Positions 23,491 to 48,600 of a DNA stretch of 64,000 bases are shown here, piece after piece. A program made the translations under genes and the position numbers. The notes under the pieces are model-generated. The model worked only from the letters and a program-made list of their open reading frames with translations. It did no database searches and was not told the DNA's origin. Numbering within the stretch: position 1 is the first letter of the stretch; each line of letters begins with the position of its first letter. Location: positions 65,844,001 through 65,908,000 of the forward strand of contig OZ287749.1 of assembly GCA_965649765.1 (NCBI GenBank), in the 5' to 3' direction. Source of the DNA: Bispira polyomma (Eukaryota).

Positions 23491-23760
23491 ATGGATCTTT
23501 CTCAAGGAAAAGCTTTTAGAGAGAGAACAGTGAAGGTTCTGAAAGAACAGTATCCTGTCAATTCCAAAACATGGTGCCAGAAATTCATGTCTAACTGTAA
23601 AAAAAAAAAACTTTGGCGAGATATAATCGACAAAGTAAATGCAGTGACAGGCGGCAAAAGTACAGCGGAGCAAAATAACAAAAAAAAATGGAAAAATTCA
23701 AAAGCCAAGACTGTGTCCACTGTGAGAAAGTTTGCCTCCTATAGTAAAGGGACAGGAAAT
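23491..23760 (+). pseudogene. Myb/SANT-like (Harbinger ORF1-type) protein remnant of the outer element
   Basis: KKKLWRDIIDKVNAV...KKKWKN.K.K.......SKGTG resembles the Myb_DNA-bind_5-type domain ending in TGGG. Confidence 0.65.
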
Positions 23761-24479
23761 TATATTTCTCTGTATTTTATGTTCGATAATATCAAGGTGA
23801 GTTTTTATTGTATTCATTGTACTAAGTGAGAACATTATGCTCATATTATGCAAATCTGCATAATTAATTGTGTCTTCTTGTTTTCAAAGCTTTTCTAAGT
23901 TTTTAGGTAGGGTAAGTAAATGTTTGTATTTATGTTTTAAACTAACAACAATGAAATTATTGATTTAATGTCAAATTAACTTTTTAAGAGGAAACATTTT
24001 TTGTTCTAATTAGTATAAATAATTCGCCGCAATGGTATAATTTAGTTAGAAGCCAGCTGACGATTTCAATCCTTGCCAGCTGATTGGCCACTCTAAGTCA
24101 GCTGTGCCCCACTCTCTTTTCCCACCTTTTCTACACAGCTATTCTTTAAGTTGGCAGCCATAATCCATTATTCACCCTGTGCCTCCCTTTAGTAGTAAAT
24201 AGGGGTGCATATTACCTACAGTTACCATGTAATGTATATTAGAAAAAGTGTCTATATATGTGTCTTAGAATATATGTGATTCTATACATGTGACTTTGAA
24301 TAAAATATTAGGACTTTATGAAGTTGTGTGACATTGCTGTGGTGTTCTCTATATTAATATAGCTGACGCACAAAGAAAAATGGACAGATTTATGACCCAG
24401 ACAAAATTGTAACCCCCATGTAATGTATTATGTCTTCACAAATTATTATAGAATTGACTTCCCTCCGTCCCCCCTAATT

Positions 24480-26054: not shown

Positions 26055-26211
26055 TTATAATCTATTGAGTTCCATCGCAACCTCTTCCTCAAAGCTTATT
26101 CCTTCTTCAAGCCGTTTCCTTTTCTCTTCTTCAATTTTCTTCTTTTCTATATCATTTTTCATCAGCTGCAGCTTCTTTTCTCTATTGGCCTTGTCTCCGT
26201 CAATCAGTTCC
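26055..26211 (-). CDS. LRRC74: LRRC74-like alternative terminal exon C
   Basis: tttcag|G GAA; ELIDGDKANREKKLQLMKNDIEKKKIEEEKRKRLEEGISFEEEVAMELNRL*. Confidence 0.8.
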
Positions 26212-26927
26212 CTGAAATATACACAGAGAAATACGGTGACATATCTATTTACGTTAATCTGTTCACTAAAATATATATAGGGTAAAAAATATGTTTCCAA
26301 ATAACAGGAACAGTGTTTGTTAAGTACTCGTTTCAATCAGTGCAAGAATCTGGAGACACAGCAGACTTTCAAAAACACATAGAGATTTCAATGTCGCGCT
26401 GTTTTGAATTATTTTGTTAACAATATGTTTAGCAGTTTAATTTTCATAGAACTCGCTAGGTGATATGAGCTGCAGTCACGAAAGAAGTAAAGAAAACTGT
26501 GGATCCAATATGACTGGCCTATTCGGGCTTCAATAAATAAAATGTATGTTCTGTTCATCTTAAAAAATTAAAGAAATAAATTGATTTTAATAAGTTATGG
26601 TTAGATAAATGAATATGATTGATTGTTGACTTGGTAGACATGACTAAATGCATTTCTACCAGTGATTTAAATACAAGATTCCACAACGCACGAGTTATTG
26701 TCATTCAGATTTGGTTAGTGACCACAGTTTAATTACACAGTGTTAAATACTATTTAAGTGTACATTAAAATATTCTGACTTAAAATCGTGGAGAATGTTA
26801 ATATCAGGTGTAGTAACATGAATAGCTACAATAAAATATTGCAAATTAGAAATAAAATACTCTTTAAGTTTATCGAATTTATACATAAAAAACAAAATGC
26901 TGGATAATGTAAGACATCACTGGACAA

Positions 26928-27491
26928 AACCAGTTTAGCCCTGTACCACATACATTAATAATACCAGTTTAACCCTGTACTAAATACATTAATAATACCA
27001 TTTAAGCCCTGTAACAAACACATTTATAATACCTGTTTAGCCCTGTACCAAATTAATTAATAATACCAGTTTAGCCCTGTACCAAATACATTAATAATAC
27101 CAACTAGTTTAACCCTGTACCAAACACATTTATAATACCAATTTAGTCCTGTACCAAATACATTTATAATACCAATTTACTTCTGTACCAAATGCATTAA
27201 TAATAACAATTTAGTCCTGTACCAAATACATTAATAATACCAGTTTAGCCCTGTACCAAATAAATTAATAATACCAACCAGTTTAACCCTGTACCAAACA
27301 TTTATAATACCAGTTTAGCCCTGTACTAAATACATTAATAATACCAGTTTAGCCATGTACCAAATACAGTAATAATACCAGTTCAGCCCTGTACCAAATA
27401 CAATAATAATAATAATAATACCAGTTTAGCCCTGTACCAAATACATTAATTATACCAACCAGTTTGACCCTGTACCAAACATTTATAATAC
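26928..27491. repeat. 34-bp minisatellite, left part
   Basis: Unit taccagtttagccctgtaccaaatacattaataa, about 16 copies. Confidence 0.95.
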
Positions 27492-29807
27492 TGTAACAGG
27501 CTAGACCAGAACTGGTTGAACCTAGATCAGAGATTATAAAGAATTAGGACTAAGTAGTATTTCCCAATGCTAGTTAAAACCAACCCAGCTCAGTATTCTT
27601 TAACCTTAAGATCACCAACTATGACTACGACCCCATAAAGGATAACCAGAACCAACGTAAATTCTCTTGTCTTCATATTTTCTCTATATGTTAGAAAAAT
27701 ATATCTATTATATATTTCATATTAACCAGAATTTCCTTTCAGGTATCTCGGCATATGCCAGTGTTAGACGGTGTACACTACGGTAATAGTGTAGACCTAA
27801 ACTATGCCTCAGTAATACCATATACTGGAAATCTTAGCCTATACCTCAGCATATTTCTAGTGATTTCACGGTGTGAACTATTTTCATAGTACAGATCTCA
27901 CTATGCCTCAGTGGTATAACTGGTTTCCTCCCAATATACTTTAGCAGTACATATGACATTTATTTTGGTATCTCGGCATTATAACATTAAATCACTTGAC
28001 TATTTTCATAGTCAGTATTTAACAATGCCTCAAACAATACCAAGACTGTGTTAACCGTCTCCGCTTACTATAAACTTTATCAACCTGTCTATTAAGTTAC
28101 AAAAAACAGGGTTGAGGTATAACAAATTAAAAGGCTAATTAGACATTCAGTTACTACTCTATTGGGAAATAATAAAGGAGATTAAATGAAAAGTAACACT
28201 TTCATTTATTAATATTCACAAGGATATACACAGAGAATATATAACAATAAAATTAGTGCCAGAATTAAACCACAAAGAGTGCAAATAATGTTCTGCACGC
28301 TATTAGAAAAGCATAAGCCACCAAATTATGTGCATTAAAAAGTGCATCAAACAAGCCCCATTCTACTCCTCAACATAAACTACATAAGATCTACACTAGC
28401 CACAACAGTTAATATATAAGCAAAGACATTCCAAACTAAGTTAGCTGAACTAATGCCCATCAGCAATAAAATAAATAAACATCCAGAATGAAATACTGTG
28501 TACATACTCAGGACAGGGCCACACCCCCCAATCTGGTAATCTTATAGGACAAAATACCCAACCCCTTTACATGACAATCAAGTACAAACTGATTAAGCTT
28601 TTCCATGACCTTATTACTGTTTATTTACAGCACAGCATGCTAAAGTTTATAAATAAACATTACCATGCTGCAATTTACAAGCAAATTTTGTATCTAAATA
28701 GCCCAGTTATATTTCTCAAATTTAATCAAGTGTCTTATGAAAGACTACATGTCCCCATTGACCTCCTGTAAAAACAACTGTCTGACCCATAAAAGCAGGG
28801 GGATAAAACAAGGGGGACATGAGGGACTCAAAGAAGGGGGACATGGGGGGGACATTTCGTGGGGGGACCCCTCCCCCTTTTTATCTTAAACATATACATT
28901 TTCCCATCCCCACTCCTAATCACTCCTTATAGCAAAAGTATTTGAGGAAATACATACTTTTCGTACTATTTAATTCCTGTAGTTTTAACAACTATTTCAT
29001 TCTTCTTTTCTTTCCTGATAAATTATAACTTTCTTCCCTCCTTCTTCACGGTTCACTTTTAGCAAGGGAACCCCCCGGAAAGGTAAACATGGTACTTATA
29101 TAGACAAAATTAATTTATGTTAAATCACTACACTGTGAATAGGCTGACATGCTCAGTGGAGCTCAAGTATATAGTTTTCAAACTACACACAACCTTTCAT
29201 AAGAAATAAAATAAATCATCTCTAATTACTAATACTACAGTATAAAACATGTTTTAAAATAGAAAGATTCACTAAATATAGTGAAATAATTACACTTTAC
29301 TGAGAACTACTTAACAGGTTCTCTTTCATATATGGATAATATATTCAGAAATTACTACACCTGACATACTTCCTGTAAAGGTCATTGAGTGACATTATGT
29401 AAAATATAAAATGACCTGTTACCTATTTAAATCTAAAACATACACACTTAGAAACATATAAAATAAAATGTCCTGTCAGTATTTTTAAAAAATACCATTG
29501 TAAAACCACTACACAATTATCAACTTCCTGGAACTGTATTTTTATATTCATACAGTGCAGCGTGATGCACCCAAATAAAACACATGAAACTCCTGTCAAA
29601 TAAATCAATTAAAATGATGTGGAATTTTAGCTGTAATACTTGAATTTAGGATATAATAATAATCTCAAAATGTGTTTAACCAAAGGATATTTACTTTAGG
29701 ATAATTTAAGGTGAGTATCATAATGATTTGAGTTGTAATTTTGACTTTAATGGGCGATAATCAAGGATACTTGCACTCGCGAATTTGGTACAGTATTTTT
29801 CTTTATA
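27492..29807 (-). repeat. 3' LTR of the Gypsy element
   Basis: Direct repeat of 35628-37923, starts tgtaacagg on plus strand. Confidence 0.95.
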
Positions 29808-29889
29808 ATACACCCTACTTCGGGAATGTAGCGTCCCACACATTCACAACATTAAATAATGAGCAACATACTCAAATGAGTAAAACTGT

Positions 29890-30871
29890 TTAATCTAAGC
29901 TAATAAAACTTTCATCAGAACTACTACTACTACAACTACTACTACTACTGCTACTACTAATTGTTCTTTGCCTCTTGCTTATATGATGTTCGAGGACCTC
30001 AGCTGCAACTTCATCTTCTGTAATGTAGTCGCTTGTGCCAACGGCCACTTCACAACTCTCCTTCCTTGACTCCATCATTCCCTGGTTCTGGTAGCACTTC
30101 ACACATTTTATCTTGGTCGTGGTCTCCGATCCTTCAGGTGACTTGTATTCTACAACTTCAACTATTGGGTATGGGACTCCATGCCGACAGGTATCCCGAG
30201 CACCTTGAATAGCTATCTGAACTACTCGCTTCTTGAAAGAAGGATCTCTCAGGTCGGTGAGATGGTAGCCAACCTGTCTCTCCAGTGGGATGTCTTTTGG
30301 TTTTCTGATAAATACCCTCCTAGTTTCCTTCACGGGGGACGATGGTGCAGGCTCACAGTTGCTGGCTTTAGGAGCTATCTCAGCTGTCGCTGGACTAGTA
30401 TTTATTGGTAACCCGGGAGTTGGATGGTAGACCTCGTCTAATTCAGGAAAGGAGCCATCTACATTCATGGGCTCATAACCCTCTGCTGCTTGAAATAGAT
30501 CAACCCCCCTTTAGTATCTCTTTGCATTGTTTAGCTACTGACGGGGACATCTTTAGTGGTGAAACGTTTGTGTCCATTTCCTGAAGAGGTATGCCTTTCT
30601 GCTTCTTCCGCGTTACCTTAACCCTTGAGCCATTTACTGTCCCAATTTGTTCCTTGTTGTGGGCATAATATGCGTACTCTGTTAGATGCTTGACTTTGAT
30701 GTGCTCTTCAATGAGCGCATCAATGCGGGTGCGGCACACCATCTTACATACTGGACACTCGTACTTGTTGTCACCGTGCCTTTCCCTCTTGTGCCTCTTC
30801 ATACTGGAACGGCTGCTAAATTGTGACCCTGTCCTCAATATCATCCTCGGTGGATGATTCAGTGTGCACAC
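29890..30871 (-). pseudogene. Extra ORF3 of the Gypsy element: C2H2 zinc fingers, Cys-motif domain, poly-Ser tail; one homopolymer frameshift
   Basis: ORFs 30500..30871 (FSSRSSMKRHKRERH; YECPVC...EHIKVKH) and 29890..30468 (CRH...CVKC, S-rich end) join if the G6 run at 30504-30509 loses one base. Confidence 0.65.
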
Positions 30872-33800
30872 TAATCAGGTGTGGAATCCTTCGGGATTCC
30901 CCACCTACTTCATGGTGACTTGATACTTGACTAAGTCGGTCACCATTCCCCGAACTTGAGTCAGTTGATGACAAGAAATTTAGTTTTGTCCGTCCTTTGT
31001 AGGGTTTGAGCCTGTTAAAGTGAACTACCAAAGCCCTTGACCTAGGCTTAGTAATTCCATATACCACCTCACTGTACCTTGTAATTACCTTGTATGGCCC
31101 CTGCCATTTCCCTTGTAATTTTGGTGAAAGTCCCTTTTTCCTAGCTGTTACTGATAACCATACCAGATCCCCAACCTTGTAAGCTTTTTCGCAATTTTCC
31201 TGTCATAAAGTCGCTTTTGCCTTTCGGCACTCAACCTTAAATGATCCCTGGCTATTTGGATGCTCTCCTCCATTCTAGTCCTTAACTGGCTAACATATTC
31301 TGAGGCATCTATGTCATGCTGATTTGGTGGTCTTCCCAATAGTAGATCAATTGGAAGGGTAGCTTCTCTTCCAAACACCATTTTGTAAGGTGATATCCTA
31401 GTACTTTCCTGTGGTGTTGACCTGTATGCTAACATCAAGAAGGGTATGTGAACATCCCAGTCATGTTGATCTCCTGAGACAAAATGACTAATCATCGTTT
31501 CCAGGGTACGGTTAAATCTTTCTACCATACCATTGGAGCTTGGATGGTATCCTGTTGTCCTGGTTTTATCTATTCCTAACATTTCACACAGTCCCGTAAA
31601 TACCTCTGACTCGAACTGTGACCCCTGATCTGACATAATTTCATATGGCATTCCAAAAGTGCAAATGAAACGTTCCATAAATTTCCTGGCAACTGTCCTG
31701 GCCTCCTGATTTGGCATTGGTATGGCCTCTGTCCACCAGAATGTACTGATTCCCTCTCCTGCTTCGTGGAAGTGGCCCCAAAATATCAATACTGACCCTC
31801 TCAAATGGACATCCACTTACGAATTTCTTCAGTGGGGCTGTTCTTTTCTTTGAAGGTCCTTTTCTTGCTGCACATGTATCACATTGCTTACACCACCTCT
31901 CAACAGAATCCCTGTATCTGTACCAGAAAAATCTTTCCTTTACTCTGTCGTATGTCTTCTGTTCTCCTAAATGTCCTGATGTTATCGAATTGTGCATTTG
32001 TTTCATGATTTCTTCCTTTAAACACTCAGGTACTACTAACTTCTTTATTTTCTTTCCTTTTCTTGCTTCCCAAATGAAGTACAGAACACCATTATCTAGT
32101 GTAAGGTGATCCCATTTACTCCAATAAGCTTTTAGCTCCTCTCCTTCCATTGATATTGTCTCCCATGCTGGCCTTTGATCTGATACTTCTTTCCACTCCG
32201 TGACCTTTCTCAATACAATATCCTCCAATAGCCATTTTCTAAGGTCACTGACGTCCCATGGTACTATCCATGCACCACTACTGCCCACTGTCTGTACCAA
32301 CACTTCTGGCCTGTGCCGTCCACACTGCCTGCATGGAATTCTCGATAGAGCATCTGCATTTTCATGCTTCTTTCCTGGATGATGCTGAATTTCAAAATCA
32401 AGTGGTGCTAAAATCTCCAGCCATCTTGCCATCTGTCCGTCAAGGTTTTTAAAATTTATCAACCACCGAAGTGAACCATGATCGGTGCGTACCAGAAACT
32501 TTATGCCAAGCAAGTAGTGTCTAAAATGCTTCACCAAATAAACTACAGAGCATAATTCTTTCCTTGTGACGCAGTAATTTCTTTCACTTCTTGAAAATGT
32601 TTTACTTCCATATGCAATCACTCGCTCCTGTCCGTCCTGTACCTGGCTTAGTACTGCTCCCATAGCCACATCTAATGCATCCGTGTCTAGTATAAACGGG
32701 TCCTTTGTGGTTGGATATGCTAACACTGGCGTGCTTGTTAACCTCCTTTTAAGCTCTAAAAATGCTGTCTGACACTTTTCGCTCCACAAAAACGCTGTTC
32801 CTTTCTCAGTGAGCCTGTGCAGTGGTTTAGCAATCTCTGAAAATGACTGTATAAACTTTCTGTAGTAGGCACAGATCCCAATAAGACTCCTTACCTGGCT
32901 TACTGAAGCAGGAGTTGGCCATTCTTTGATTGCTCTTGTCTTTTCTGAGTCAGTTGAAATTCCATCCTTTGAAACTATATGCCCCAAAAATGGTACCTTC
33001 TGTTGAAATAGGACACACTTCTTTGATTTCAGTGTAAGGCCAGATTCACGTAATTTTTGAAATACTAATCTGAGCCTCTCCAAACCTTGTTCAAAACTTA
33101 TACTAAATGAGATGATAACATCAAGATACAGAAGTAGCTCTTTCCACTGCAAACCTGCAAAGATGGTTTCCATTAGCCTCTGAAAAGTAGCTGTTCCATT
33201 TGCTAGACCAAAAGGTAGAACCTTATACTGGTACAGGCCATGTCTTTCGGTAGCAAAATCTGTCTTTTCCTTATCACTGGGATCCATTTCGATCTGGTTA
33301 TATCCACTGGCCAAATCTAGTGTAGGAAAGTACTTTGCTCCTGACAAATGGTCCAGGCTCGTTTGAACTGAAGGTACGCTGTAGGAGTCTTTCCTAGATA
33401 CATCATTAACGCGGCGAAAATCAATACATGTCCTCAAACTGTTATCCTTTTTGCGTACTAAGACTATTGGTGAACACCATGGACTGTCTGATGGTTCTAT
33501 CAATTCTTTAGCTATCATGTCTTCCATAGCTTTATCTACTTCTCTTAAATGGATCGGGACTGGCCTCGGTCTTTGCCGTATTGGTGCAGCATTTCCTGTA
33601 TCAATCTTGTGCCTAACTAAGCTAGTCCTTCCTTTTTGGCCCTTTCCATCTACAAATATGTCCTGGTACTGCTTGATTAACTCTTCCAGCTCCTCAGTCT
33701 GTAGAACTCCTTACAAGCAAGTCCTGTATATGATCCGGAATCTCTGTGCTCTGTGTAGTCACTTCTGAAGTGGTCAGTTGATTTATTAGCGTCCTTGGTT

Positions 33801-34530
33801 GTTGGTCCTTTTCAAGTATGTCAATGACTGGATGTCCAATTGCTACTGTTGTGCCTTTTCTGAGTAGGACTTCTTCATGTATTGTGTTCCAAACTCTGAC
33901 TGGAATGTGACCTGTAGTTACATCAACCAATGACCTGGCCACCAAGACCCCGCTCCTTTCTGCCAGCAAAGAGGTGCCCTCTAACATGTTATGTGGTGCT
34001 AACTTACCCTTCTTGTTGACCTTGGCCTGTATAATAGTCTCTTCTAGTGGTCTGAGCTTTTCGTTTTCCTGTATTACTATCTGACAACATTGGACCTCCA
34101 TATTTCCGTCCACATTTACTGTGACTTTGTGACCATCTAGGATAATTTCTGATTTTGCTATGTCCAGTTTACAGTTGTGGTTCATCATGAAATCCATTCC
34201 TAGAATTCCTTCAACTTTTATATCTGCAACAATTATTGTATGTTCTATCAGGTTCCTGCCAAAATCCATGGATCCTGGATACTTCAAATTCCTGTCCATC
34301 TGCAAGCCAAATTCCATATGGTAAATTGTCCAACTTAAAACTACAGTTTTTATTTACATGCTTATATAATTGTTTGGACAACAGTGTAACGGCTGAACCT
34401 GTGTCAAGCAAAAAATTGACACTTAATCCACCTACTTTCCCCTTTATACTAATTCCATTCTCACCAGGCACTGCCAAAACTTTGTGAGGCCGATTATTAC
34501 TTTGGACTGGTTCCTGGCCTAAGGAATCAG
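30816..34530 (-). pseudogene. pol: Gypsy Pol (protease, RT, RNase H, integrase, GPY domain), disrupted
   Basis: FLLDTGS; WCSPIVLV, LDLASGY, LPFGL, YLDV (catalytic YLDD mutated); LDTDA, TDHGSL, ADALSR; HHCC zinc finger; SIDILG, SDQG, VERFNRT; WQGPYKV; several frameshifts and a deletion in the integrase. Confidence 0.93.
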
Positions 34531-34594
34531 CCCGTCCTAGTTTGACACTTTAAATTTTTCTCATTTTTCTCCAGCGGGTTTGAACCCAAACCCG

Positions 34595-35623
34595 TCACCC
34601 TTTTTTTTCCATTTTGCAGTCTCTACGGCTATGACCAGTGTTGCTACAATTCCAACATCTGAAGTTTTCGGAACTCCTTGGTCTCCTAGTTCTTAGTTCC
34701 TGTATTTCCTCCTTTAAAGTGCCCACTGCTTGACTCAGTGACTGCATCATTTCCTTTATTTGTGCTCCAAATTCCTGTCCCAATGGTGCCTTGGTAGTAC
34801 CTATGTCAGTGGTAATTTCCCGTACCATTTTTCTGCTGTTATTATTGCCACGGTGCTTTTCTGCCAACTGAAAAACCTCCATTTCTACAGCAACTCCCAC
34901 TGCTTGGTCCAGATTGGCTCCTTTTGACTGGAATATCCTGAATCTCATCTCGGCATCATTCAAAGCATCAACAAAGTGGTCTTTGCATAGCATCTCCAGT
35001 AAGGTTCCCTTAGCGTCTGGGTATGCCTTAATTGCAAGATTCCTAATAGTCTGTGCCAGCTGAGGAATGGACTCCTTCTCTTTCCTTGTGTAGTTCCTAA
35101 GTTGAATCCGATAAAGCTCCGTCTTATCACCAGGGTTAAACCTGCGTCCAAGTGCTTCCACAAAAGTATTAAAATCCCACCTTGCTTCTTCCGGAAGAGA
35201 TGGCAGCATTTTACATGCCTGGCCCCTGAGACTGACAGCTAAGTACTGCTGCTTTTCCCTTAAAGTCCACCCATTGAGTTCAGCCACCACATTAAAATGT
35301 GTCAAGTAGTCTCCCCAAGACCCACTGCCGTCATACAAATCAGGCATAACCTTGACCCTTGACCCAGTTTTCCTACTGCCAACCCTATGATGATCCCCTG
35401 CAAATAAGCTTTGCCCATGCATGGCTGCATCACCCTGATATCCCCTGTTGCCATCCTGCTGCATTCCTCTCAGTGCCTCTGCTGCCCCTAAATCATGCCT
35501 GGGCCTAGAATGACCACCATGTCCTGCTCCTTCAGTCAGATCCTCCCTATCACCAACCTCTGATCCTGTCTCTACCACATCCATGTTCCTAAGACTGTTT
35601 AGAGATCCCACATCTGACACCAA
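34595..35623 (-). CDS. gag: Gypsy Gag with CCHC zinc knuckle
   Basis: YDGSGSWGDYLTHF, LAVSLRGQA, ESIPQLA, CWNCSNTGHSRRDC; open 342-codon ORF (first ATG at ~35584). Confidence 0.9.
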   Translation of the reverse strand: MVSDVGSLNSLRNMDVVETGSEVGDREDLTEGAGHGGHSRPRHDLGAAEALRGMQQDGNRGYQGDAAMHGQSLFAGDHHRVGSRKTGSRVKVMPDLYDGSGSWGDYLTHFNVVAELNGWTLREKQQYLAVSLRGQACKMLPSLPEEARWDFNTFVEALGRRFNPGDKTELYRIQLRNYTRKEKESIPQLAQTIRNLAIKAYPDAKGTLLEMLCKDHFVDALNDAEMRFRIFQSKGANLDQAVGVAVEMEVFQLAEKHRGNNNSRKMVREITTDIGTTKAPLGQEFGAQIKEMMQSLSQAVGTLKEEIQELRTRRPRSSENFRCWNCSNTGHSRRDCKMEKKG

Positions 35624-35627
35624 AAAT

Positions 35628-37923
35628 TGTAACAGGCCAAACCAGAACTGGTTGAACCTAGATCAGAGATTATAAAGAATTAGGACTAAGTAGTATTTCC
35701 CAATGCTAGTTAAAACCAACCCAGCTCAGTATTCTTAAACCTTAAGATCACCAACTATGACTACGACCCCATAAAGGATAACCAGAACCAACGTAAATTC
35801 TCTTGTCTTCATATTTCTCTATATGTTAGAAAAATATATCTATTATATATTTCATATTAACCAGAATTTCCTTTCAGGTATCTCGGCATATGCCAGTGTT
35901 AGACGGTGTACACTACGGTAATAGTGTAGACCTAAACTGTGCCTCAGCAATACCATATACTGGAAATCTTAGCCTATACCTCAGCATATTTCTAGTGATT
36001 TCACGGGTGAACTATTTTCATAGTACAGATCTCACTATGCCTCAGTGGTATAACTGGTTTCCTCCCAATATACTTTAGCAGTACATATGACATTTATTTT
36101 GGTATCTCGGCATTATAACATTAAATCACTTGACTATTTTCATAGTCAGTATTTAACAATGCCTCAAACAATACCAAGACTGTGTTAACCGTCTCCGCTT
36201 ACTATAAACTTTATCAACCTGTCTATTAAGTTCAAAAAACAGGGTTGAGGTATAACAAAATTAAAAGGCTAATTAGACATTCAGTTACTACTCTATTGGG
36301 AAATAATAAAGGAGATTAAATGAAAAGTAACACTTACATTTATTAATATTCACAAGGATATACACAGAGAATATATAACAATAAAATTAGTGCCAGAATT
36401 AAACTACAAAGAGTGCAAATAATGTTCTGCATGCTGTTAGAAAAGCATAAGCCACCAAATTATGTGCATTAAAAAGTGCATCAAACAAGCCCCATTCTAC
36501 TCCTCAACATAAACTACATAAGATCTACACTAGCCACAACAGTTAATATATAAGCAAAGACATTCCAAACTAAGTTAGCTGAACTAATGCCCATCAGCAA
36601 TAAAATAAATAAACATCCAGAATGAAATACTGTGTACATACTCAGGACAGGGCCACACCCCCCAATCTGGTAATCTTATAGGACAAAATACCCAACCCCT
36701 TTACATGACAATCAAATACAAACTAATTAAGCTTTTCCATGACCTTATTACTGTTTATTTACAGCACAGCATGCTAAAGTTTATAAATAAACATTACCAT
36801 GCTGCAATTTACAAGCAAATTTTGTATTTAAATAGCGCAGTTATATTTCTCTAATTTAATCAAGTGTCTTATGAAAGACTACATGTCCCCATTGACCTCC
36901 TGTAAAAACAACTGTCTGACCCATAAAAGCAGGGGGATAAAACAAGGGGGACATGGGGGACTCAAAGAAGGGGGACATGGGGGGGACATTTCGTGGGGGG
37001 ACCCCTCCCCCTTTTTATCTTAAACATATACATTTTCCCATCCCCACTCCTAATCACTCCTTATAGCAAAAGTATTTGAGGAAGTTTTAACAACTATTTC
37101 GTTCTTCTTTTCTTTCCTGATAAATTATAACTTTCTTCCCTCCTTCTTCACGGTTCACTTTTAGCAAGGGAACCCTCCCCCCCCCCCCCCCCCCCAAAGG
37201 TAAACATGTTACTTATATAGAAAAAATTAATTTATGTTAAATCACTACACTGTGAATAGGCTGACATGCTCAGTGGAGCACAAGTATATAGTTTTCAAAC
37301 TACACACAACCTTTCATAAGAAATAAAATAAATCATCTCTAATTACTAATACTACAGTATAAAACATGTTTTAAAATAGAAATATTCACTAAATATAGTG
37401 AAATAATTACACTTTACTGAGAACTACTTAACAGGTTCTCTTTCATATATGGATAATATATTCAGAATTTACTACACCTGACATACTTCCTGTGAAGGTC
37501 ATTGAGTTACATTATGTAAAATATAAAATGACCTGTTACCTATTTAAATCTAAAACATACATACTAGAAACATATAAAATAAAATGTCCTGTCAGTATTT
37601 TTGAAAAAGTACCATAGTAAAACTACTACACAATTATCAACTTCCTGGAACTGTATTTTTATATTCATACAGTGCAGCGTGATGCACCCAAATAAAACAC
37701 ATGAAACTCCTGTCAAATAAATCAAATAAAATGATGTGGAATTTTAGCTGTAATACTTGAATTTAGGATATAATAATAATCTCACAATGTTTTAACCAAA
37801 GGATATTTACTTTAGGATAATTTAAGGTGAGTATCATAATGATTTGAGTTGTAATTTTGACTTTAATGGGCGATAATCAAGGATACTTGTGCTCGCGAAT
37901 TTGGTACAGTATTTTTCTTTATA
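35628..37923 (-). repeat. 5' LTR of the Gypsy element
   Basis: Adjacent to PBS; differs from the 3' LTR by scattered substitutions, small indels and a 32-bp deletion near 37082. Confidence 0.95.
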
Positions 37924-38310
37924 ATACCAGTTTAGCCATGTACCAAACACATTTATAATACCAGTTTAGCCCTGTACCAAATTAATTAATAATACCAACT
38001 AGTTTAACCCTGTACCAAACACATTTACCCACTAGTTTAACCCTGTACCAAAAACATTTATAATACCAATTTAGTCCTGTACCAAATACATTTATAATAC
38101 CAATTTAGTTCTGTACCAAATACATTAATAATAACCGCTTAGCCCTGTAATAAATACATTAATAATACCAGTTTAGCCCTGTACCAAATACAGTAATAAT
38201 ACCAGTTCAGCCCTGTACCAAATACAATAATAATAATACCAGTTAAGACCTGTACGAAATATCCAAATACATTTTTAATACCAGTTTAATCATATACCAA
38301 ATACATCAAT
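37924..38310. repeat. 34-bp minisatellite, right part (same array split by the Gypsy element)
   Basis: Same unit resumes in register after the LTR. Confidence 0.95.
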
Positions 38311-38312
38311 AA

Positions 38313-38628
38313 GCCTAGGCTTCCTTACAGCATATTTCTCTCGACCAACTTTATCAGTCATTGCTTAATATTACCAAGTGCTTCCTTTCAACATATTTGC
38401 TGCAGAGCAGATCAGATGCTGGCAGATGTCTGTTGCCCCAACATAATTTATCAATTGGGAAGCGAAAAAAGGGACGTCAGTCTAATTTTTGAACCAAAAT
38501 TTGGAATAAAAAATTATCACACCATTTTACATAGTACTTATCGAATGAAAGGAAGCCCTACATCAGCTGATGTCGCTCTAATTTAATAAATTGGCCGACG
38601 TCGAGATTGACTGAGAGGAAGCCCGGGC
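38313..38628. mobile_element. PIF/Harbinger-type MITE just downstream of terminal exon B
   Basis: TIRs gcctaggcttcct / aggaagcccgggc; TAA TSD; related to 60445-61142. Confidence 0.75.
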
Positions 38629-38682
38629 TAAGACAATTAGAGTGCCTAAATATGAAGTTCCACAATATCATTTGTGTTCTGT

Positions 38683-38827
38683 TTATTCAGTGTTTAGGTT
38701 ATCCACATAATCAAAGCCATCGTTAAATCGTTGTTTTTGCTGTTCCTCCTCTTTGGCTTTCTTAGCAGCCTGCTCTTTAGCTTGTCTGAGTTTCTCCTTG
38801 TTTGCCTTATCTCCATCCACCAATTCC
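38683..38827 (-). CDS. LRRC74: LRRC74-like alternative terminal exon B
   Basis: tttctag|G GAA; ELVDGDKANKEKLRQAKEQAAKKAKEEEQQKQRFNDGFDYVDNLNTE*; AATAAA overlaps the stop (38682-38687). Confidence 0.8.
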
Positions 38828-38945
38828 CTAGAAATAAAACCAAAAGCTTTAAGGACTGACTTTGTAAAAAAAATGTATTATTTTACAAAGGGCAGTTTAT
38901 TGTTGGGAAGGAAGCCATGCACAGTAGTTGGTCAAGGTTTCTGAA

Positions 38946-39036
38946 CTGCAAACCACCGGTATATTGGCATACAAGTATACTTGTATGCCAATATACGGCA
39001 AACCACCGGTATATTGGCATACAAGTATACTGGCAT
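38946..39036. repeat. 51-bp tandem duplication
   Basis: gcaaaccaccggtatattggcatacaagtatact repeated at ~38948 and ~38998. Confidence 0.85.
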
Positions 39037-40339
39037 ATGTCCTACATTATGCAGTGCCTTAGACTCGAACCCATGACTGCAGATGTGGGAGGCGTGACTG
39101 TTACCTCTATGTCACAGAGCCCTCCAACAGTGTTAGTTTGCTCTACCAATATATCTGACGACCGTAATATAAATGCATCATTACATTGTAAATGGTGATG
39201 ATGCCTCAAAAATATTAGAAACCAGTTTTAGATTTACTTTTTTTCACCATAATATGATGGGTAAATATACATAGACATTTACGTTATTCAGCTTATTCTA
39301 TATAACTTGCATGTGAGTATTTTCAAATGTTATAAATGTGATCCAAAAAGCACATGCTCTTGGCTTGTAAAATAGCTATAGTATTACTAAAAATTCACTC
39401 TCGAGTGTATGCTAGCAAGGTATATTATGTGTTTGTGACTTTGACAACTATATCGTGATGGTTGCTTCATTGCAGTATACTTGTAAGCCAATATAACATA
39501 TAATCTATGCCGTACACCAATGGTAAAAATGGAAAGTACATTGCATACTTTACCACATGGAAAAAAATAGACAAAGAGGACAGTGGTTCAAATCCAACTG
39601 GGTAAAGAAACAAGTGACCAGAAAGCTAACATATATATCTCATTCTCTTTGTGACGGTATACTTCGATCATTACCTCTGTTTTTACTCTTTAGTTGGTTT
39701 GTTTGTTACCAGTATTATACAAAAAAAAAACAATTGCTCAAGTAAAAATTAAACTAAATTTTGGAGTGAATCCGGATAGAAGGGCAGATCTATATAAGAA
39801 GTTGTCTAAAATGTTGGCACCGTGATTTCTTGATAGAGGTATGATGCATCTACTGAAAATTCCCTTCTAGTTTATAAGGTAAATACACTGTTAACCATTA
39901 TATCAGAGAGGCCATGCCATTGTTAATTGCATTCACTTTGCCCTGTAATGCATGCGCCATGCTCAAACCATAGTTTAGTTTGAACCACATCACTTCTAAA
40001 CATTCATTATCAAACATAGAAAACAAAGTGAGACTTAAACACAAAAATACTCACACTTTTTATATGCAGGTGCAGCGCTCTCTCGTCAAATTGTAATTCA
40101 AACCTCCAAAATAACCCAAATGTCTTTCCAACTCCAGTACTTTTTATCAGCTGTTTCTGTCGTTTCTCTGATGTTTAGCTTCTTTTAATCATTGATGCAT
40201 ATTTGTTCAGTTCATTGTACTATGTAACTTTTTACATTTGAATCTAATATTAACTACCTACACACCTTTCTTTCTTCAAAGTCTGGCCATAATGCCTTTT
40301 TAACAATAATATATTATTCAAGGGCTTATGCATTTTAAT

Positions 40340-40540
40340 TTAGCTGAGTTTAATGTTGCTTTTAACAGCTTAGGATATATCACGATGGCCAGATTTAATG
40401 GTAGAAGAAACCACGACATACGGCAAAGTACCTGATAAACTTTCCCACGTGAAGGAACAAATAGATTTAGAACCCACAAGTGTGAGACCAGTGATTATTA
40501 GCAAGTTGCTCGAACCACTAGGCTACCGCTGCCCCTCAAA
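40340..40540 (-). mobile_element. tRNA-derived SINE-like fragment
   Basis: Minus strand gcggtagcctagtggtt (A box) ... gtgggttctaaatc (B box) ... aaatctggccatcg.atat..cctaagctgttaaaa; second copy at 45870-46046. Confidence 0.6.
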
Positions 40541-41589
40541 GGCATATGCAAATTTATGTCAATGTTTGGCCAATCAATAAAAAAGATTAAGTCATCAGCA
40601 TAGTATAAAACAGATACTTTGAAGTAGCATTTCAAGAAACTGGTTTATAAAATTTAAATAAAGTAGATTTTTTCTTTCATCCTATTGGATAATAATTGTT
40701 TGAACTAGGGCTTTATTATGGGTGGCACATTTCTGTGCAAAATGTGTGGGTAATATATATAACTTTTATAATATTTAATAATCCTGTGAAAAGAGAAACT
40801 TGCTTTTTCTTATTTGCTTTACTGGTTCTAATTAGGTTGTAAAGAATCTGATAAACTAAGAGGTAGGATTAAAACAGTTAAAATGTGAATATTTAGTTCA
40901 GTGCTGACTAACCCCCTGAAGCTTGTGTATTATTCTTTTGGAAAACACAATAAAACACAAAAACAAAAAACACAACAAGTGTATTTTAGATAAATAAATA
41001 CAACATTAAGTATGAGTGAAATGAATGAGATCTTGTGACAAAATCTAGTGACTTGCTGTGATTCGACACTGTAGAGATATTTCATTTATAATGCAGTGTC
41101 TGCATACAAGGACCACTGGTAAAATAGCTAACCTAAATTTAATGAACAGATAAGTACATATAAATCATAAATTAACTATTACTTGTGAATATCTAGAAAA
41201 ATAATATAAATAGCTTATAAACTATGAACTTGTACTAAACACTGAGGCACTACAGGTGTCCGGTTTGTTAAAATAAAATAATAAATTGTGTAAATAAATA
41301 AATTTTACAATGTGTGTACACTAAATATAGGTTAGCCTCCATATTAGTGTTCAATCTTTAATAATAAAGAAAACTGTTGGCGAGTTGTTGAATGAAGTTT
41401 TAATACATGTACATATCCCAACGTGATAGACGATTAAGATTTATATATAAAAGCACACATTCATGTTTTTCCTGTAAGTTAAGAAACTGTTTCAATTTGT
41501 GCTCTCAAGATGCCTTATTATAATTTCCAAAACCTTATAATGTCTAGAAATGCTATTGTGTTTTCATGTGAGCACTATTGGATTTTGCA

Positions 41590-42560
41590 AGCTGTCTTAA
41601 AATGATAAACAATGACCCTTGCAGAAATGCTTGCATTCATCTGCAATGCACCTGTTTATAAAAAAGCTAAGATCTGCTTCCATATTAGCAATATCAACTT
41701 TGATAAATATTCCAAAATGACAGACTTTTTAGTATAGTAGTGTGCTCTCAAATGAGCAAAGGTTAATATAAATACTTATTCTAACATGATATACAATAAA
41801 GATTAATTAATGCATAAATGCTGCCATTATGTTTTTCTTGTAATTGTATCAAGCTCTTCCAATATCTGCTCTGAAGCTTTTTGGATATGAATTCCAAACC
41901 ATTAGAAACCATCAAGAAAACTGTGCTTTTAATGGAGCGAAATTAAAATGAATTAACATTTAACATTAATACTTTCATTAATGGACAATGTCCCTGTTCA
42001 GTTTCCCTGTATTATATAATATAAAGGCTAAGATATCTTCACTTTGATTGGACTTTGAAGGTTTAATAAAGCAGTCAACTTTTATAGTTATCTTAAAATG
42101 AAAAAAAAACCCCCAAAACAATGACCCATGTACAATGCATTAGTTAATGTGTCTACCTACATCATTTAAAAAGGGTAAGATCTTATGACCTTAATTGAAC
42201 TCCTAGGTTTACTAAAATAATAAACTTTAATACTTATCTTAGAATGAAAAAAAAAACGCCACAATGACCCATCAATGCTTGCAACAATGCACAATGCATT
42301 CGTTTATGTGACTGTCTGTATGCTATCAGAAGGCTAAGATCTCTTGACTTTGATTGAACTGCTAGGTATACTAAAGTAGTAAACTTCGATAGTTATCTTA
42401 AAATTAAAAAAAAACCCAAAACAATGACCCTTGCACCAATTCTTGCTACATTGCTTGTATCAGTTCACGATGCATTCGTTTATGTGCCTGCCTGTCTGAT
42501 ATCAAAAGGCTAAGATCTCTTGACTTTGATTGGACTGCTAGGTTTACTAAAGTCATCATC
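41590..42560. repeat. Degenerate ~150-180-bp tandem repeat overlapping the end of terminal exon A
   Basis: aaaggctaagatctcttgactttgattg.actgctaggtttactaaa unit at ~42023, 42171, 42329, 42504, plus decayed copy at ~41595-41705. Confidence 0.85.
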
Positions 42561-42687
42561 ATCATCAAACAGGAAGCCTTCCTCTTCACGTTTTCTCCTA
42601 ACTTCTTCTTTTTCCTCTTTTTCCACATTGGCTTTTAACAGTTCTCTTAACTTTGCTCTGTTCATGTTGTCACCAGAGACAAGCTCC
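42510..42687 (-). CDS. LRRC74: LRRC74-like alternative terminal exon A
   Basis: tttag|G GAG; ELVSGDNMNRAKLRELLKANVEKEEKEEVRRKREEEGFLFDDDDDFSKPSSPIKVKRS*. Confidence 0.85.
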
Positions 42688-45600
42688 CTAAAGGGGTCAT
42701 AAAGTGCAAGTGTACAATGAAGTGCAGAAACAAAAGACAATGAAACAACAAATAAACACATAAAACCTACAGCATGCTGAACTTGATGCTATGTCAGTAA
42801 TTTTAAAAACCTCCAGAAATTTACTTAAAAGCTTTCTGAAAAAAAGAACAAATATGCTCAACTTTCAATTTCTCTCCAAACCTGTTATCTTTAATACCCC
42901 CAGCATAGTAATTATATAAAATTGTATCACTGTGTTTTGACATTTTCAACAAGAAAGTAAGCATACTAAGATTAAATTTGTCAATTTCTAATTTTTTCAG
43001 TTTCTAGTTTTTCTTTCGGAAAATAGAGTTTCTACGCCAATGAAATTTAAGATCACAAAAAAAAAAAAAAAATAAGTAGTGCAGGCTGAAATCTCTAGTG
43101 TTTTACTTGTGACATTTACATCTGTGCATAAACACATCGGTGTTTCTGTTAAATATATCTGAGCAACAAATATCAAAATAGTTTTGACTAGCGGCTTGTT
43201 GACAAATGGTATATATTTATAACCAATACAACATGAGTAATCATTAGTGTTATGTTTTGTTCAGGGTTATGAAAATGGTAGATAAAAAGAAAGCAAAACT
43301 AATTTTAAAAGGTTTTTAAGAATTTCATGTAAGTTTGATACTAAATGTCAATTAACGGATATTCATATATTTCCAAACATTTGTCATCGGTAATAAACCA
43401 ACAGTGAAGGAAAATGATACTTTGTTGCACAAGGTATAAAAACTTTTCATCATACATATATATATTTAGTGTGCAGCTTTTGTTAAATACAAATTGAACT
43501 GTTAAGAGATATTATTCAAACATTCACTGTGTATATAACAGTAACTCATAATGTAAGTGAAAATGCTGAGACGAGGGCTACTGGGATTACGTGTGACTGA
43601 AATATATATGTCAGATTTGACGTACTGTTTCCAGTGAAATTGATATCATAATTCACTGGACAGAGTGCAGCCATGTTGGATTTTATCGTATGGATACATT
43701 GACTAGATCAAATTATTAACACTCAATTTGAGGGATAAGAGTAAACGCTAATGGTATGATAGTATGTATAATTCTGTGATATTGACTGTGACCGAATATT
43801 TTGTCTTTTTATTTTGAAAAATACTTTCAATATGGCCATGCCCTGTCCAGTAAAATTGCAGAATTTAGCTGTTTGGAAGATGCACCGCTGCTGACAAGAT
43901 ACAGAATCTTCATATTAAGATGACTTTGTGTAAAAAGGCTACCATGTCCTAGTACCTCTGCATGATCACTTACAGATATATGTTTTTTTTTTGTTCTAAT
44001 ATGTATGCAGATAACAAACAATAAACAGCAAGAGTTCTGGTAACATCAACGTCACATACCCATAGTCGATTTCACCGTCACCATCCTGGTCCAACGTAAG
44101 AATTAGTTTGTCTATTTCAGCTTCTGACATTTCTATACCAGTTGACTGAAACATAGTTCATAAAGGAAGTACATGTTAACCAGTTGTAGAGTGTAAGTCA
44201 TACAGTGGGGTATGATTCTGGAAATGAGAAACAGGGATTTAAATTCAGTCATTGGATTTAGTTTAAAACAGGGTAGTTGATCAAGGATTTTAGCTCTGCA
44301 AACCACTCTGGCCTGTGACAATTCTACTTACTGCCAGAGCCGAGATTTAAACTATTAATACTGCAGATGTAGGAGGCCAGTGCGGTAAGGAGCAGGGAGA
44401 TATTTTACTTGAAAGTTCCATAATTTTAACAGTAACCTTTAGACGTTTAAAAGAGGGTAGCCAATTCTCAACAGAAGACTCCTTACTTTGACTCCTGCAA
44501 TAAATTCATCTCTGTCCACACTCCAGCTGTTGTCTTTGTCAAACTGCCTAAACAGATCTACCAACCGCAACTTATTTTTTTCTGCATATCTGAAATGTAC
44601 AAACATTCAAAAGCGGATGTAAACAGTGTAGTAGTCTTTCTGAATCGGGGTACTTTTATGATACTGATATATATAAACCATAGACTTTGCACTTTGGGTT
44701 GAGTACCAGACAATTTTTTCATTCGGAGATGGTCTTCTATGAAAGCAAGGAAAACCTATTTAAGCATTTACTGATGTATTTGTTAATGATGCACTTGTTT
44801 ATACTGAAATATAAACATATTTTCAGTAAACAGAAGTAATATTTCAGTGAAATTAAAACAATAAGATTAAAGGATAGCAATATTATACGTTTGTTGATGT
44901 ACTTTTCCAGCTACAGCTAATGGTGTCCGATCAGGTGCTGTACATTTTTATCATGAAAACGTGGACTTTTAAGGCCTCTTTAATGACCCAATTTAAGAAT
45001 AGCAATACGATCAGGGTCGGTATTGATAAACATTCCTAGTCTTAAATTTTTGTCTTTACTAATGAGATTGGGTGAAAATATTCTTTCAAAAAAAATCTGA
45101 TTGGCTGAGACTGAGATAATCTTTTGAAATTTTATTAAAATAATGTTTGTTGAGATATCTCCTACATCTACCATATAACTACAGCAGTACAGAGGACCAT
45201 GTACCAACCTCTTCAGTTTGGTCATGGGATCATTCTCAAATTCATCCAGTGGGTCTACATCTGAGTAGTGGATCTTGTTGGCATAATAAACACCACCATG
45301 GATGACCTTCAACTTGTAGAACTCTCTCTGATCATTGACCTTTGCATGTAAAGTCTCAAACTCATCCATTACAATGACATTCTGGAGCAGAGGACAGAGT
45401 AACATACAAATTGTAAAGTGAAAAACCCCATACTGGATTATGAGTGTACAAAACACTGACATATTCCCTGGATTTGGAGTTTTAACAAATATTGTATTAT
45501 TTATTTTTTTAACCATATACAGTTAATAACACATTGAAGCATGGCTACTTACAGTTAAGTCCAATAAATTCAGGGTGGAGTTGTCATTCTTTCCTATAGC

Positions 45601-48600
45601 AGAGAGCAATGCAAATGCACCATTGGCAGTAATAGGATTTCTTCCAAGCTGTCAAAGATAAAAAAAGGATTTGTTAAAAATATTTCAAAGCAATATTATT
45701 ATTAGTGATACTAATAAACAAATGTTAACACTAAAAATAACTCAACAATAAGCCTAATGAATGCTGGACAGGTGGTTTTATTACACTAAAATATCTGGCT
45801 GTTAAATGATGACTTACATGATGAAATTGGCATAAAAACTCAAATACACTTTACAATAGATTTGACTTTAAATTTAATTTTAACAGCTTAGGTCATATTG
45901 CGATGGCCAGATTTAAGGGTGGAAGAACACCACCAGCCTATGGCAAGTACGTGACAAGATGAAGGAATAAACAGGATATAAAACCCACATTAGTGAGAGC
46001 CCAGGGATTGTGAAGCTAACGCTTCTGACCACTAGACCACTGTGGCTGTTCTCCACACTAGATTTGAGAGATACAGTCACATAAAAACTCTACATACCCT
46101 GATTGTTTCCAACACATCATTGACCAGCAGTCCTTTAGCCACCTGCACTGCTCCCTCTTGGCTGATCCTGTTTGCCATAATGTTGAGCTCTACCAGACAT
46201 TGATTATGTTTCAGTGCGGCCCCCACAGCGGCTGCCCCCTCATCACCCAGCCCATTCATCATCAGGTTCAGGTATTTCAGTCCATAGTTTTCCTTAATCA
46301 TCTCCGCAATATATACAGCCCCCTTTAACCGGATTTTATTCCAACTGAGATCTAATATTCTGAGGTTTTCATTTTCGGATAAGGCATCGCGTATCCATTT
46401 GGCAGCCATGAATTCAAAATTGTTGTGCTTGAGTACTAGTTGTTTTAGGGTGGAATTGTTCTGAAATTTAAGGAAGCATTAGACAGCATGAGTGAATGCA
46501 ATGTAGAAGCAAGCAAGTAATAGAAGCATTGTGTAGATAGAACTATGACATAGTTTAAATGCCATATATATCTAATGATGAAATTATTTTATTTTAGGAT
46601 TTATTTTTCAGTATTATTGTAAGACATTCTATGACATTTCATTAGAACCCAAATAGTCCAGTTTAAAAAGTTTTGTTAATAGCAAACTGTTTCCTTAAAT
46701 TTCACAACAATACATTATAATACATTTGCATTACAGACACACACAATATACAACAGCCCAATTTTACATCTACAGTATTAAAAAAACCAAAAACAACCAT
46801 ATTCTGTTGAAGTGTTAAAGTCACCTACTATTAACATAGTGTGGAAGTGTTCTCCATCTGAGTCTCTGAAGTGATTCCCTGATAAGTCGAGTTCTTTGAT
46901 AGTTGTGTGTTCTTTTAGAGCTGAACAAATAATCTGAGCACCTTCTGAACCTAAGTCATTTTCCGACAAATTCTAAAATACACGATATTCAGTTTGTGCC
47001 ATATTAGAGATTACATAATAAGGTTAAAATGGTATCTAATATTGTTCTATTCCTTATAGTGATTGTATTGCATGTATTGTAGTAGAAAATTAAGTTAATA
47101 AAAACTAACTTCTAGCATAATACAGTAATTTTAGAGATGATTAGCTCTACTCTAACAAAAATATTATAAAAATAACAACTATATCTCAAGTTCAATTGAT
47201 TTAAGAATATTATTAATGATACTGAAGCTTGAGCCTTAGTAATATAATTTAACACCATAGTTTGGGTAAAATACTGCGAAAGCGCAGTACTGCTGTTGCT
47301 GGTTTTGAAGAACTTACCACATCCGTTATGTACAAGTTTTCTTTCATAGTTTTACACAAAAACATCAGACCTTCTCCGCCAATATCATTTCCCTCTAAGT
47401 CCAAACTCTCAATCTTTGTGTTATTCTGTAAAAGACAAAGGGAAGCTAGGTCTTCTGTAATATATATTGTATAATATGGGAATTCGGTGTTGTCATAATT
47501 TAGGTAGAAACATTGAGATAGATGTTTGCATAATGTACAGCAAAGTACGAACACAATCTCTTCAATACAAACAACCAGCTGGGTATTTATGGTTATAAGA
47601 TAAAAAGGCAGAGAAATGTAAACACAGTGTGTCAAGTACAAATAATTCAAGATGTCCAAAATGTAGTTATTTTGTGAGAGTATTGTTTAGAAGAACTCCG
47701 TGAGACTAAATATAATATACTGTGTGATATTCAACAAATATAATCTCAGTCATATGTGGCCTCTGTGGCCTAGCGGTTAGAGTGTTGGACATTGGATTTG
47801 AGGGATCTGAGCTGCTGGCCTAGAGATTCTATTCTTGGCCAAGGTTCTTGACACAAATTTGTCACTCTCTATCCAAGCACGGCTAGCATACTTCCAGATA
47901 GGGGGCTGAAACTAAACAATTGGTTTACAAGTGGAAGATTCCAAAGTGTAAACTGTTAAGTCGGCTGAGACCTCGATAGAGGTGATATCAGACTACGTTA
48001 TTATATAGTATATGTATGTAAATCATTAAGGTAAAGCACTGACAAACACTGTCAAAAAGAGTACACTGGTCTATTTAAAACCAATCTTATTCTTAATGTA
48101 TTATGGAAGAAACATGATTTTAATTTACTTTGATCACTTGTCCACAAATCCAGTAATCTAATGTTTATGAAAATGACATACTTAATGTACTTGGCGTATT
48201 TTCATAAGAGAGTGAGGCTTAAATACAACTGCAACTATTAGATAAATGATCTAACATAGATGACACTGTCGATTGTTTATACAAGTTACAAGTGTGTGGA
48301 TATCTGACGACAAAAACACCTTGACCAGTACTAACGTTTTAACTGAATTAGTACAAAATATGATTCACTCATTCATTGCAGAATCAATTGATCAGATTCA
48401 ACCAACCAGTTTAAAAGATTAGAAGGAAAATCTCCTCAGATCAAAGATCGAGACATTTCTGACATAGTTTACATATAGCTGATAATGGGGGTCGATTGGC
48501 TATTGTATATTATTATCAAATACAATCATCTGATACAATTCAGTGTTATTTAATAGTTACTTTTGTGGTAATATCAATATTGACTCTGTTTTGTTGCCAA

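What the first reader, a model, noticed from the sequence alone, without database searches (positions are those of the whole stretch)
26055..44145. Cassette of three paralogous, mutually exclusive terminal exons on an LRR/EF-hand protein
Seen: after the phase-2 donor at 44060 there are three separate exons (A 42687-42510, B 38827-38683, C 26211-26055), each with a polypyrimidine/AG acceptor in the same phase, each starting G|EL[VI][SD]GD.[AM]N[RK].K, continuing as a charged helix to R[EFL][EN][ED]G[FI].[FY] and ending in its own stop. They are clearly homologous at protein level yet diverged in DNA with no shared flanking intron, and all three frames are open, which argues for old exon duplication under purifying selection rather than junk duplication. 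No other exons of the gene are duplicated between them, so they are not three genes. Inference: a splice/polyadenylation switch giving three C-terminal tails (and three 3'UTRs) on one LRRC74-like core. I do not know of this arrangement being described for LRRC74-family genes.
Basis: partly seen in the sequence, partly recalled or inferred. Interest (0 to 1): 0.85.

Follow-up and report, generated by a model that had tools for sequence, protein, structure and literature searches.

The report
Three alternative tails, cilia LRR gene
An invertebrate gene for a probable cilium protein (LRRC74-like) carries three old, intact copies of its last exon, so it most likely makes three versions that differ only in the tail after the calcium-binding hand; this gene layout is well known elsewhere, but we found no report of it in this family and have no RNA proof.

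Summary
An 11-exon LRRC74-like gene (minus strand) ends in a phase-2 donor at 44060, inside the loop of EF-hand 2. Three homologous last exons (A, B, C) each complete it in frame (630, 619, 623 aa), each supplying the loop's twelfth-position Glu. They are the only three copies found in the genome. Third codon positions are at shuffle background while first and second are conserved (omega far below 1, p<1e-9), so all three were under purifying selection for most of their history. No RNA run exists, so use of the junctions is inferred. A young, same-sense Gypsy element lies before C and may hamper it. The layout is a known kind: tandem-duplicated homologous last exons with separate poly(A) sites (77 human cases; tropomyosins have three). 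New here: the family. Two other LRRC74-like paralogues in this genome also show duplicated exons at the same spot (twin last exons on C3, twin EF-hand exons on C8), while the nearest annotated relative (Owenia) has one tail. The scan noted the same layout before in an Ig gene of this genome. Verdict: real, new member of a known kind, moderate interest.

The parts
56748..56846 (-). candidate first coding exon (ATG at 56846); least certain exon
   Evidence: joins in frame, GT donor; no homology support
53384..53584 (-). candidate exon 2, low-complexity N-terminal region
   Evidence: joins in frame; no homology support
50760..50919 (-). exon 3, acidic, ends in the family's TDLE motif
   Evidence: matches LRRC74 proteins and the ENA orthologue
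49075..49256 (-). exon 4, LRRC74 N-terminal cap with HHGLGP motif
   Evidence: E 1e-17 to LRRC74 proteins; 73% to ENA orthologue
47318..47425 (-). exon 5, LRR
46829..46972 (-). exon 6, LRR
46098..46460 (-). exon 7, LRR_6 repeats
   Evidence: Pfam PF13516 E 4e-18; whole exon matches PDB 9fqr chain Km
45553..45648 (-). exon 8, last LRR
45209..45381 (-). exon 9, linker
   Evidence: single copy in genome; 85-88% to ENA orthologue
44487..44589 (-). exon 10, EF-hand 1
   Evidence: Pfam EF-hand_6 E 3e-6
44060..44145 (-). exon 11, EF-hand 2 up to loop position 11; shared phase-2 donor at 44060
   Evidence: Pfam EF-hand_7 E 7e-5
42510..42687 (-). last exon A (58 aa), 1.4 kb below the donor
42019..42553 (.). 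159-bp tandem repeat (about 3.5 units) covering the last 13 codons and stop of A and its 3' UTR
38683..38827 (-). last exon B (47 aa), 5.2 kb below the donor
27492..37927 (-). Ty3/Gypsy LTR retroelement in the intron before C, same sense as the host gene, inserted in a 34-bp minisatellite (26926-27491 and 37918-38312); LTRs 2.3 kb, 1.5% apart; not part of the gene
26055..26211 (-). last exon C (51 aa), 17.8 kb below the donor (7.4 kb without the LTR element)

Best explanation
One LRRC74-like gene with three alternative last exons made by ancient tandem duplication of the family's ancestral last exon. The shared donor at 44060 splices to A, B or C; each exon has its own stop and, by inference, its own 3' UTR and poly(A) site, so the choice is made by competition between cleavage after the nearer exon and splicing to a farther one. 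All three isoforms keep the LRR solenoid and both EF-hands, including the twelfth-position Glu of EF-hand 2, so the switch does not turn calcium binding off. What is swapped is the second half of the EF-hand's exit helix, a charged helix of fixed length ending in a Gly-aromatic motif at tail positions 37-40, and the 3' UTR. Most likely role: ciliary or sperm axoneme protein (bovine LRRC74A sits in the distal lobe of the nexin-dynein regulatory complex), with tails giving different partners or different mRNA control in different ciliated cell types. Shown: anatomy, frame, homology, purifying selection, family. Inferred: splicing, poly(A) sites, tissue choice, axonemal role.
For: In-frame models of 630/619/623 aa with canonical GT-AG. 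Codon-position identity 0.58/0.68/0.33, Fisher p 1.5e-8; codon model omega about 0.04 with saturated dS, LRT against omega=1 p<1e-9; per-branch p 0.007-0.024 (B), 0.03 (C), 0.08-0.13 (A). Shuffle control: third positions 42 against 35.8 +/- 5, first 75 against 43.5, second 88 against 52.8. A dead copy stays open with its AG in about 35% of simulations at 0.05 substitutions per site, 13% at 0.1, under 3% at 0.2. Five paralogues in this genome and the Owenia gene have the same phase-2 intron, and their last exons start EL/EM; the annotated Owenia last exon begins ELLSGDK and keeps Gly-37 without gaps. No consensus donor in the last 150 nt of A and B or 600 nt after their stops. AlphaFold gives one helix, residues 4-36 of A (pLDDT 67). 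Two more paralogues carry duplicated exons at this spot.
Against: No RNA evidence at all. No orthologue with the tail region was reached, so conservation of three tails in another species is untested. Poly(A) hexamers after each stop are no denser than background. With dS saturated, per-branch tests are weak, and A alone is not significant. The same-sense LTR element carries three AATAAA per LTR and is young, so an open frame in C says little about use since the insertion (about 72% stay open at 0.015). Orthology to vertebrate LRRC74A or B is not resolved, so the axonemal role is by family.
Confidence: 0.72

Rival explanations
1. A and B are used; C was a real isoform but has been cut off recently by the same-sense Gypsy element, whose LTR poly(A) signals end transcripts before C.
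For: LTR-LTR distance 1.5%, three AATAAA in each LTR, intron lengthened from 7.4 to 17.8 kb. C would probably still be open after so short a time.
Against: Many intronic LTR elements are spliced out without effect (own knowledge). C's acceptor is as good as the others and C has the cleanest charge pattern of the three (19 opposite-charge i+3/i+4 pairs against 2 like pairs).
Confidence: 0.15
2. Only one tail is used now; the other two are recently dead relics of once-functional exons.
For: No expression data; saturation hides recent relaxation.
Against: Two independent recent losses with intact frame, acceptor and motifs are unlikely given the age: each copy must have been constrained until within about 0.1-0.2 substitutions per site.
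Confidence: 0.07
3. A, B and C are internal mutually exclusive exons that splice on to a shared non-coding last exon, or are chosen by competing RNA pairings as in Drosophila PGRP-LC.
For: The mechanism exists for 3' variable regions (PMC6191721); untranslated last exons cannot be seen from sequence (PMC3228551).
Against: No donor consensus after A or B; no complementary docking/selector stretch beyond short repeat-derived or chance matches. Without relatives this search is weak.
Confidence: 0.04
4. B and C belong to another gene or are left-overs of whole-gene tandem copies.
For: The family does form tandem gene pairs elsewhere (two genes on C6).
Against: No body exon copy between the tails; exons 9 and 10 have no close second copy in the genome; decaying gene copies would not keep only the last exon under selection.
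Confidence: 0.02

Closest known systems
Tandem duplicated exon substitution at the C-terminus (homologous 3'-terminal exons, multiple poly(A) sites): human CAPZB, TPM1, Drosophila Tm1, C. elegans lev-11
   Same: Homologous last exons in tandem behind one donor, same phase, own stops. 77 of 236 human events are C-terminal swaps, often helices or coiled coils; TPM1, Tm1 and lev-11 each have three such exons (PMC9741552; PMC3228551).
   Different: Different protein family; LRRC74 is absent from that paper's text and from the two supplements held. Expression is unproven here.
LRRC74A / LRRC74B family
   Same: TDLE and HHGLGP N-terminal motifs, RNI-like LRR_6 solenoid, C-terminal EF-hand pair; 33-40% identity over about 450 residues, E down to 1e-104. 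Bovine LRRC74A is an N-DRC distal-lobe subunit (PMC11779644).
   Different: Belongs to a separate clade with an Owenia gene (100/99 support), not with vertebrate genes. Relatives examined in Owenia, Nematostella and Pocillopora have one ending.
ACTN1/ACTN4 duplicated EF-hand exons
   Same: Exon duplication touching an EF-hand (PMC9741552).
   Different: There one copy loses calcium binding and the exons are internal; here all three keep the twelfth-position Glu. The twin 86-nt exons of the C8 paralogue are the closer match to actinin.
Drosophila PGRP-LC, CG42235, Pip 3' variable regions
   Same: Several duplicated 3' cassettes behind a common core (PMC6191721).
   Different: Those use competing RNA pairings; none found here.

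Membership tests
Tandem duplicated homologous last exons | Copies homologous, adjacent, same strand, same phase as one shared donor | tested here: met
Tandem duplicated homologous last exons | Each copy has its own stop; rest of gene not duplicated | tested here: met
Tandem duplicated homologous last exons | Copies kept by purifying selection | tested here: met
   (jointly strong; branch A alone p 0.08-0.13)
Tandem duplicated homologous last exons | Each copy found in transcripts | not testable with these tools
   no RNA run; only genomic contigs
Tandem duplicated homologous last exons | Own poly(A) site for each copy | tested here: inconclusive
   hexamers 96-456 nt after the stops, at background density
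Mutually exclusive exons in the strict sense | Internal cluster flanked by common exons on both sides | tested here: not met
   each copy stops; no donor after A or B; definition in PMC3228551
3' variable region with competing RNA pairings | Conserved docking and selector sequences | tested here: inconclusive
   only repeat-derived or 11-14 nt matches; no related genomes to test conservation
LRRC74 family | N-cap motifs + LRR_6 solenoid + C-terminal EF-hand pair, colinear with named members | tested here: met
LRRC74 family | One-to-one orthology with vertebrate LRRC74A (N-DRC subunit) | tested here: inconclusive
   deep branches unresolved; groups with Owenia 679-aa gene
LRRC74 family | Location in the axoneme | not testable with these tools
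   by family only (PMC11779644)
Canonical EF-hand | 12-residue loop with acidic ligands at 1, 3, 5, Gly 6, Glu 12 | tested here: met
   loop DQDGDGEIDYGE in all three models; calcium binding itself not tested

The most novel reading that the evidence does not exclude
The LRRC74-like family of this animal has repeatedly evolved exon-duplication switches at EF-hand 2 and its tail (three tails here, two tails in the C3 paralogue, two EF-hand exons in the C8 paralogue) to build cell-type-specific versions of an axonemal calcium-sensing subunit, with the tail acting as a fixed-length helical arm that docks a Gly-aromatic motif on different partners in sperm, larval and adult cilia.
Probability: 0.2. 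Interest if true: 0.62.

Novelty: new member of a known kind. Interest (0 to 1): 0.38.

Why it matters
LRRC74 proteins are barely studied; one was only recently placed in the nexin-dynein regulatory complex. Three tails kept for a long time mark the region after EF-hand 2 as the functional, tunable end of the protein and point to a conserved 37-residue spacing shared with Owenia. If the isoforms sort by cilium type, this would be a splice-level route to axoneme diversity in an invertebrate, where mammals mostly use paralogues (own knowledge). Practically, automated annotation will call only one tail. The gene layout itself teaches nothing new.

Tried and rejected
RNA support: the look-up of sequencing runs gave three DNA runs of one study; laid on 38620-44600 they showed no joints and no polymorphism; C was outside the 6,000-letter limit. 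Orthologue tails: two metagenome scans found nothing; a 77-88% identical orthologue exists on short ENA contigs, but all end about 85 nt after exon 10. The representative search was swamped by many-repeat LRR proteins; an alignment led by a bacterial LRR protein gave mostly noise; the Nematostella query gave paralogues only. Atlas searches of exon 9 and tail C gave nothing usable; Pfam has no family for the tails. RNA-pairing search negative. The retroelement was described only. Rejected: haplotig artefact (copies too diverged), composition-driven similarity, whole-gene copies, a calcium on/off switch (Glu 12 invariant).
Full report
Observation. The upstream exon 44145-44060 ends GG|GTATGT, phase 2, and each tail begins with one G, so all three read Gly-Glu-Leu. 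They match each other at E 3e-10 to 1e-6 and align without gaps over 43 codons. A scan that knows nothing of the tails, asking only for a phase-2 acceptor followed by Glu and a hydrophobic residue, returns A, B and C and nothing else in the 44 kb below the donor. A profile of the three finds only these in the 1.035 Gb genome. Flanks do not align. Contigs from three public DNA runs tile donor, A and B with no differences.

The gene. Eleven exons from 56846 to 44060 join in frame with GT-AG ends, giving 630, 619 and 623 residues with A, B and C (the first two exons rest on frame only). Pfam finds LRR_6 and two EF-hands. The model is colinear with proteins named LRRC74A/B-like from corals, amphibians, fish, bivalves and Owenia at 33-40% identity. 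The Nematostella member matches PDB 9fqr chain Km over nearly its whole length, the chain that also takes the whole LRR exon; I read that chain as bovine LRRC74A, which PMC11779644 places in the N-DRC distal lobe, though the tool prints another molecule name. In a tree the gene groups with an unnamed ENA orthologue (77%) and an Owenia 679-residue gene (100/99); its relation to vertebrate genes is open, and this genome's own paralogues were not in the tree. The organism is not given; an earlier scan note calls it a worm, which fits the tree but was not tested.

Where the switch sits. The donor falls inside the loop of EF-hand 2, DQDGDGEIDYG|E. The twelfth ligand, Glu, comes from the tail and is invariant, so the isoforms should all keep the site; this differs from alpha-actinin, where one duplicated exon loses calcium binding. 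The same intron is present in five paralogues of this genome and in Owenia, and their last exons start EL or EM. So A, B and C are copies of the family's ancestral last exon. After the EF helix comes a Glu/Lys/Arg-rich stretch with more opposite-charge than like-charge i+3/i+4 pairs (15:9, 10:3, 19:2), predicted as one helix for A (residues 4-36, modest confidence), then Gly-37 and an aromatic residue. The Owenia tail, which is the annotated end of that gene, keeps Lys-23 and Gly-37 without gaps (positions 13-43, shuffle p 0.012). A's extra last 13 residues lie in a 159-bp tandem repeat and are not homologous to B or C.

Selection. Identity at codon positions 1, 2, 3 is 0.58, 0.68, 0.33 (Fisher p 1.5e-8). 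A codon model gives omega near 0.04 with saturated dS and rejects omega = 1 at p below 1e-9; branch tests give p 0.007-0.024 for B, 0.03 for C, 0.08-0.13 for A. Shuffling codons shows that third positions are at background and that composition does not explain the first two. Simulated neutral decay leaves frame and acceptor intact in 13% of runs at 0.1 substitutions per site and under 3% at 0.2. Since silent sites are saturated, each copy has been constrained for most of its life. This cannot exclude a very recent loss.

The caveat for C. Between B and C lies a 10.4 kb Ty3/Gypsy element (27492-37927; RT, RNase H and integrase domains), inserted in a 34-bp minisatellite, in the same sense as the host gene, with LTRs only 1.5% apart and three AATAAA in each. 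Without it C is 7.4 kb from the donor. It may cut transcripts short of C; at that age C would probably still look intact.

A pattern in the family. Of about eight paralogues seen in part, two more have duplications at this spot. The C3 gene has two short candidate last exons (L029:4829 and 9915), both phase 2 with 75% pyrimidine tracts and both starting EM-x-x-GA. The C8 gene has two 86-nt EF-hand-2 exons (L020:8324-8409 and 9171-9256), both phase 0 to 2, which would shift the frame if joined, the mark of a mutually exclusive pair. In 488 kb scanned, 7 of 53 phase-2 Glu acceptors fit the family start, and all 7 lie below an LRRC74 EF-hand donor on the right strand (the pattern was drawn after seeing the hits). 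The Owenia relative has one tail, with a convergent gene 600 bp on; the Nematostella and Pocillopora genes lack the intron. The Mya and Mytilus genes gave no exon-11 hit and were not assessed.

Mechanism. Most likely the three are alternative last exons chosen by competition between 3' cleavage and splicing to a farther acceptor (inference; class described in PMC3228551). No donor follows A or B, and no docking/selector pairing was seen. Poly(A) hexamers follow each stop but at background density. Function is inferred from family: an axonemal LRR/EF-hand protein with interchangeable helical tails and 3' UTRs.

Comparison and novelty. Homologous last exons are the most enriched class of tandem exon substitution in humans, 77 of 236 events, and three tropomyosin genes carry three each. 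PGRP-LC and others have 3' variable regions. No paper found mentions this for LRRC74. The scan has noted the same layout in an Ig gene of this genome. It is therefore a new member of a known kind.

Limits. Verdict: real, probably functional, ordinary in kind, of moderate interest for its family and its recurrence in paralogues; interest 0.38.

Noticed in passing
L029:4829-4868 and L029:9915-9948 (G000:C3 about 41.392 and 41.397 Mb, +): LRRC74-like paralogue with two short homologous candidate last exons (12 and 10 residues) behind the same phase-2 EF-hand donor at L029:998.
   Followed up: partly
L020:8324-8409 and 9171-9256 (G000:C8 about 50.349-50.350 Mb, +): LRRC74-like paralogue with two 86-nt EF-hand-2 exons of identical phase that cannot be joined in frame: candidate internal mutually exclusive pair; one tail at L021:9094.
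   Followed up: partly
window 27492-37927: Young Gypsy element, LTRs 2.3 kb and 1.5% apart, primer site starting TGGTGTCAGA, reading frames interrupted, inserted into a 34-bp minisatellite; extra ORFs at 30874-29893 have no Pfam match at E 0.001 for the first.
   Followed up: partly
window 42019-42553: 159-bp tandem repeat whose unit holds the end of coding exon A, its stop and part of the UTR; later units keep near-copies of the last 13 codons.
   Followed up: partly
L005 (G000:C1 about 73.099-73.101 Mb, -): Degraded partial copy of exons 7-9 of this gene (about 65-79% identical in pieces); no EF-hand or tail exon seen in 30 kb.
   Followed up: partly
window 61740-63197: Intronless forkhead gene (477 aa, Pfam PF00250 E 2e-27) about 5 kb upstream of the LRRC74-like gene, same strand, with an unusual recognition helix.
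   Followed up: no
G000:C2:66021607-66031513 (+): Another LRRC74-like paralogue about 120 kb from this gene on the opposite strand; Owenia also has two adjacent family members (L033), there tail to tail.
   Followed up: no
L010 (ENA ERZ27264195 contig): Orthologue 80-88% identical in protein but with short introns and different intron positions: exon 9 is split and exons 9-10 are fused.
   Followed up: partly
window 5113-6846 and 21583-23826: hAT-like transposase ORF (435 aa open) and fragments of a Harbinger-like DDE_Tnp_4 transposase.
   Followed up: no
window 40340-40510, 43650-43850, 38930-39090: High-copy short interspersed repeats in the introns around exons A and B, some in opposite orientation; no long inverted pair found.
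   Followed up: partly
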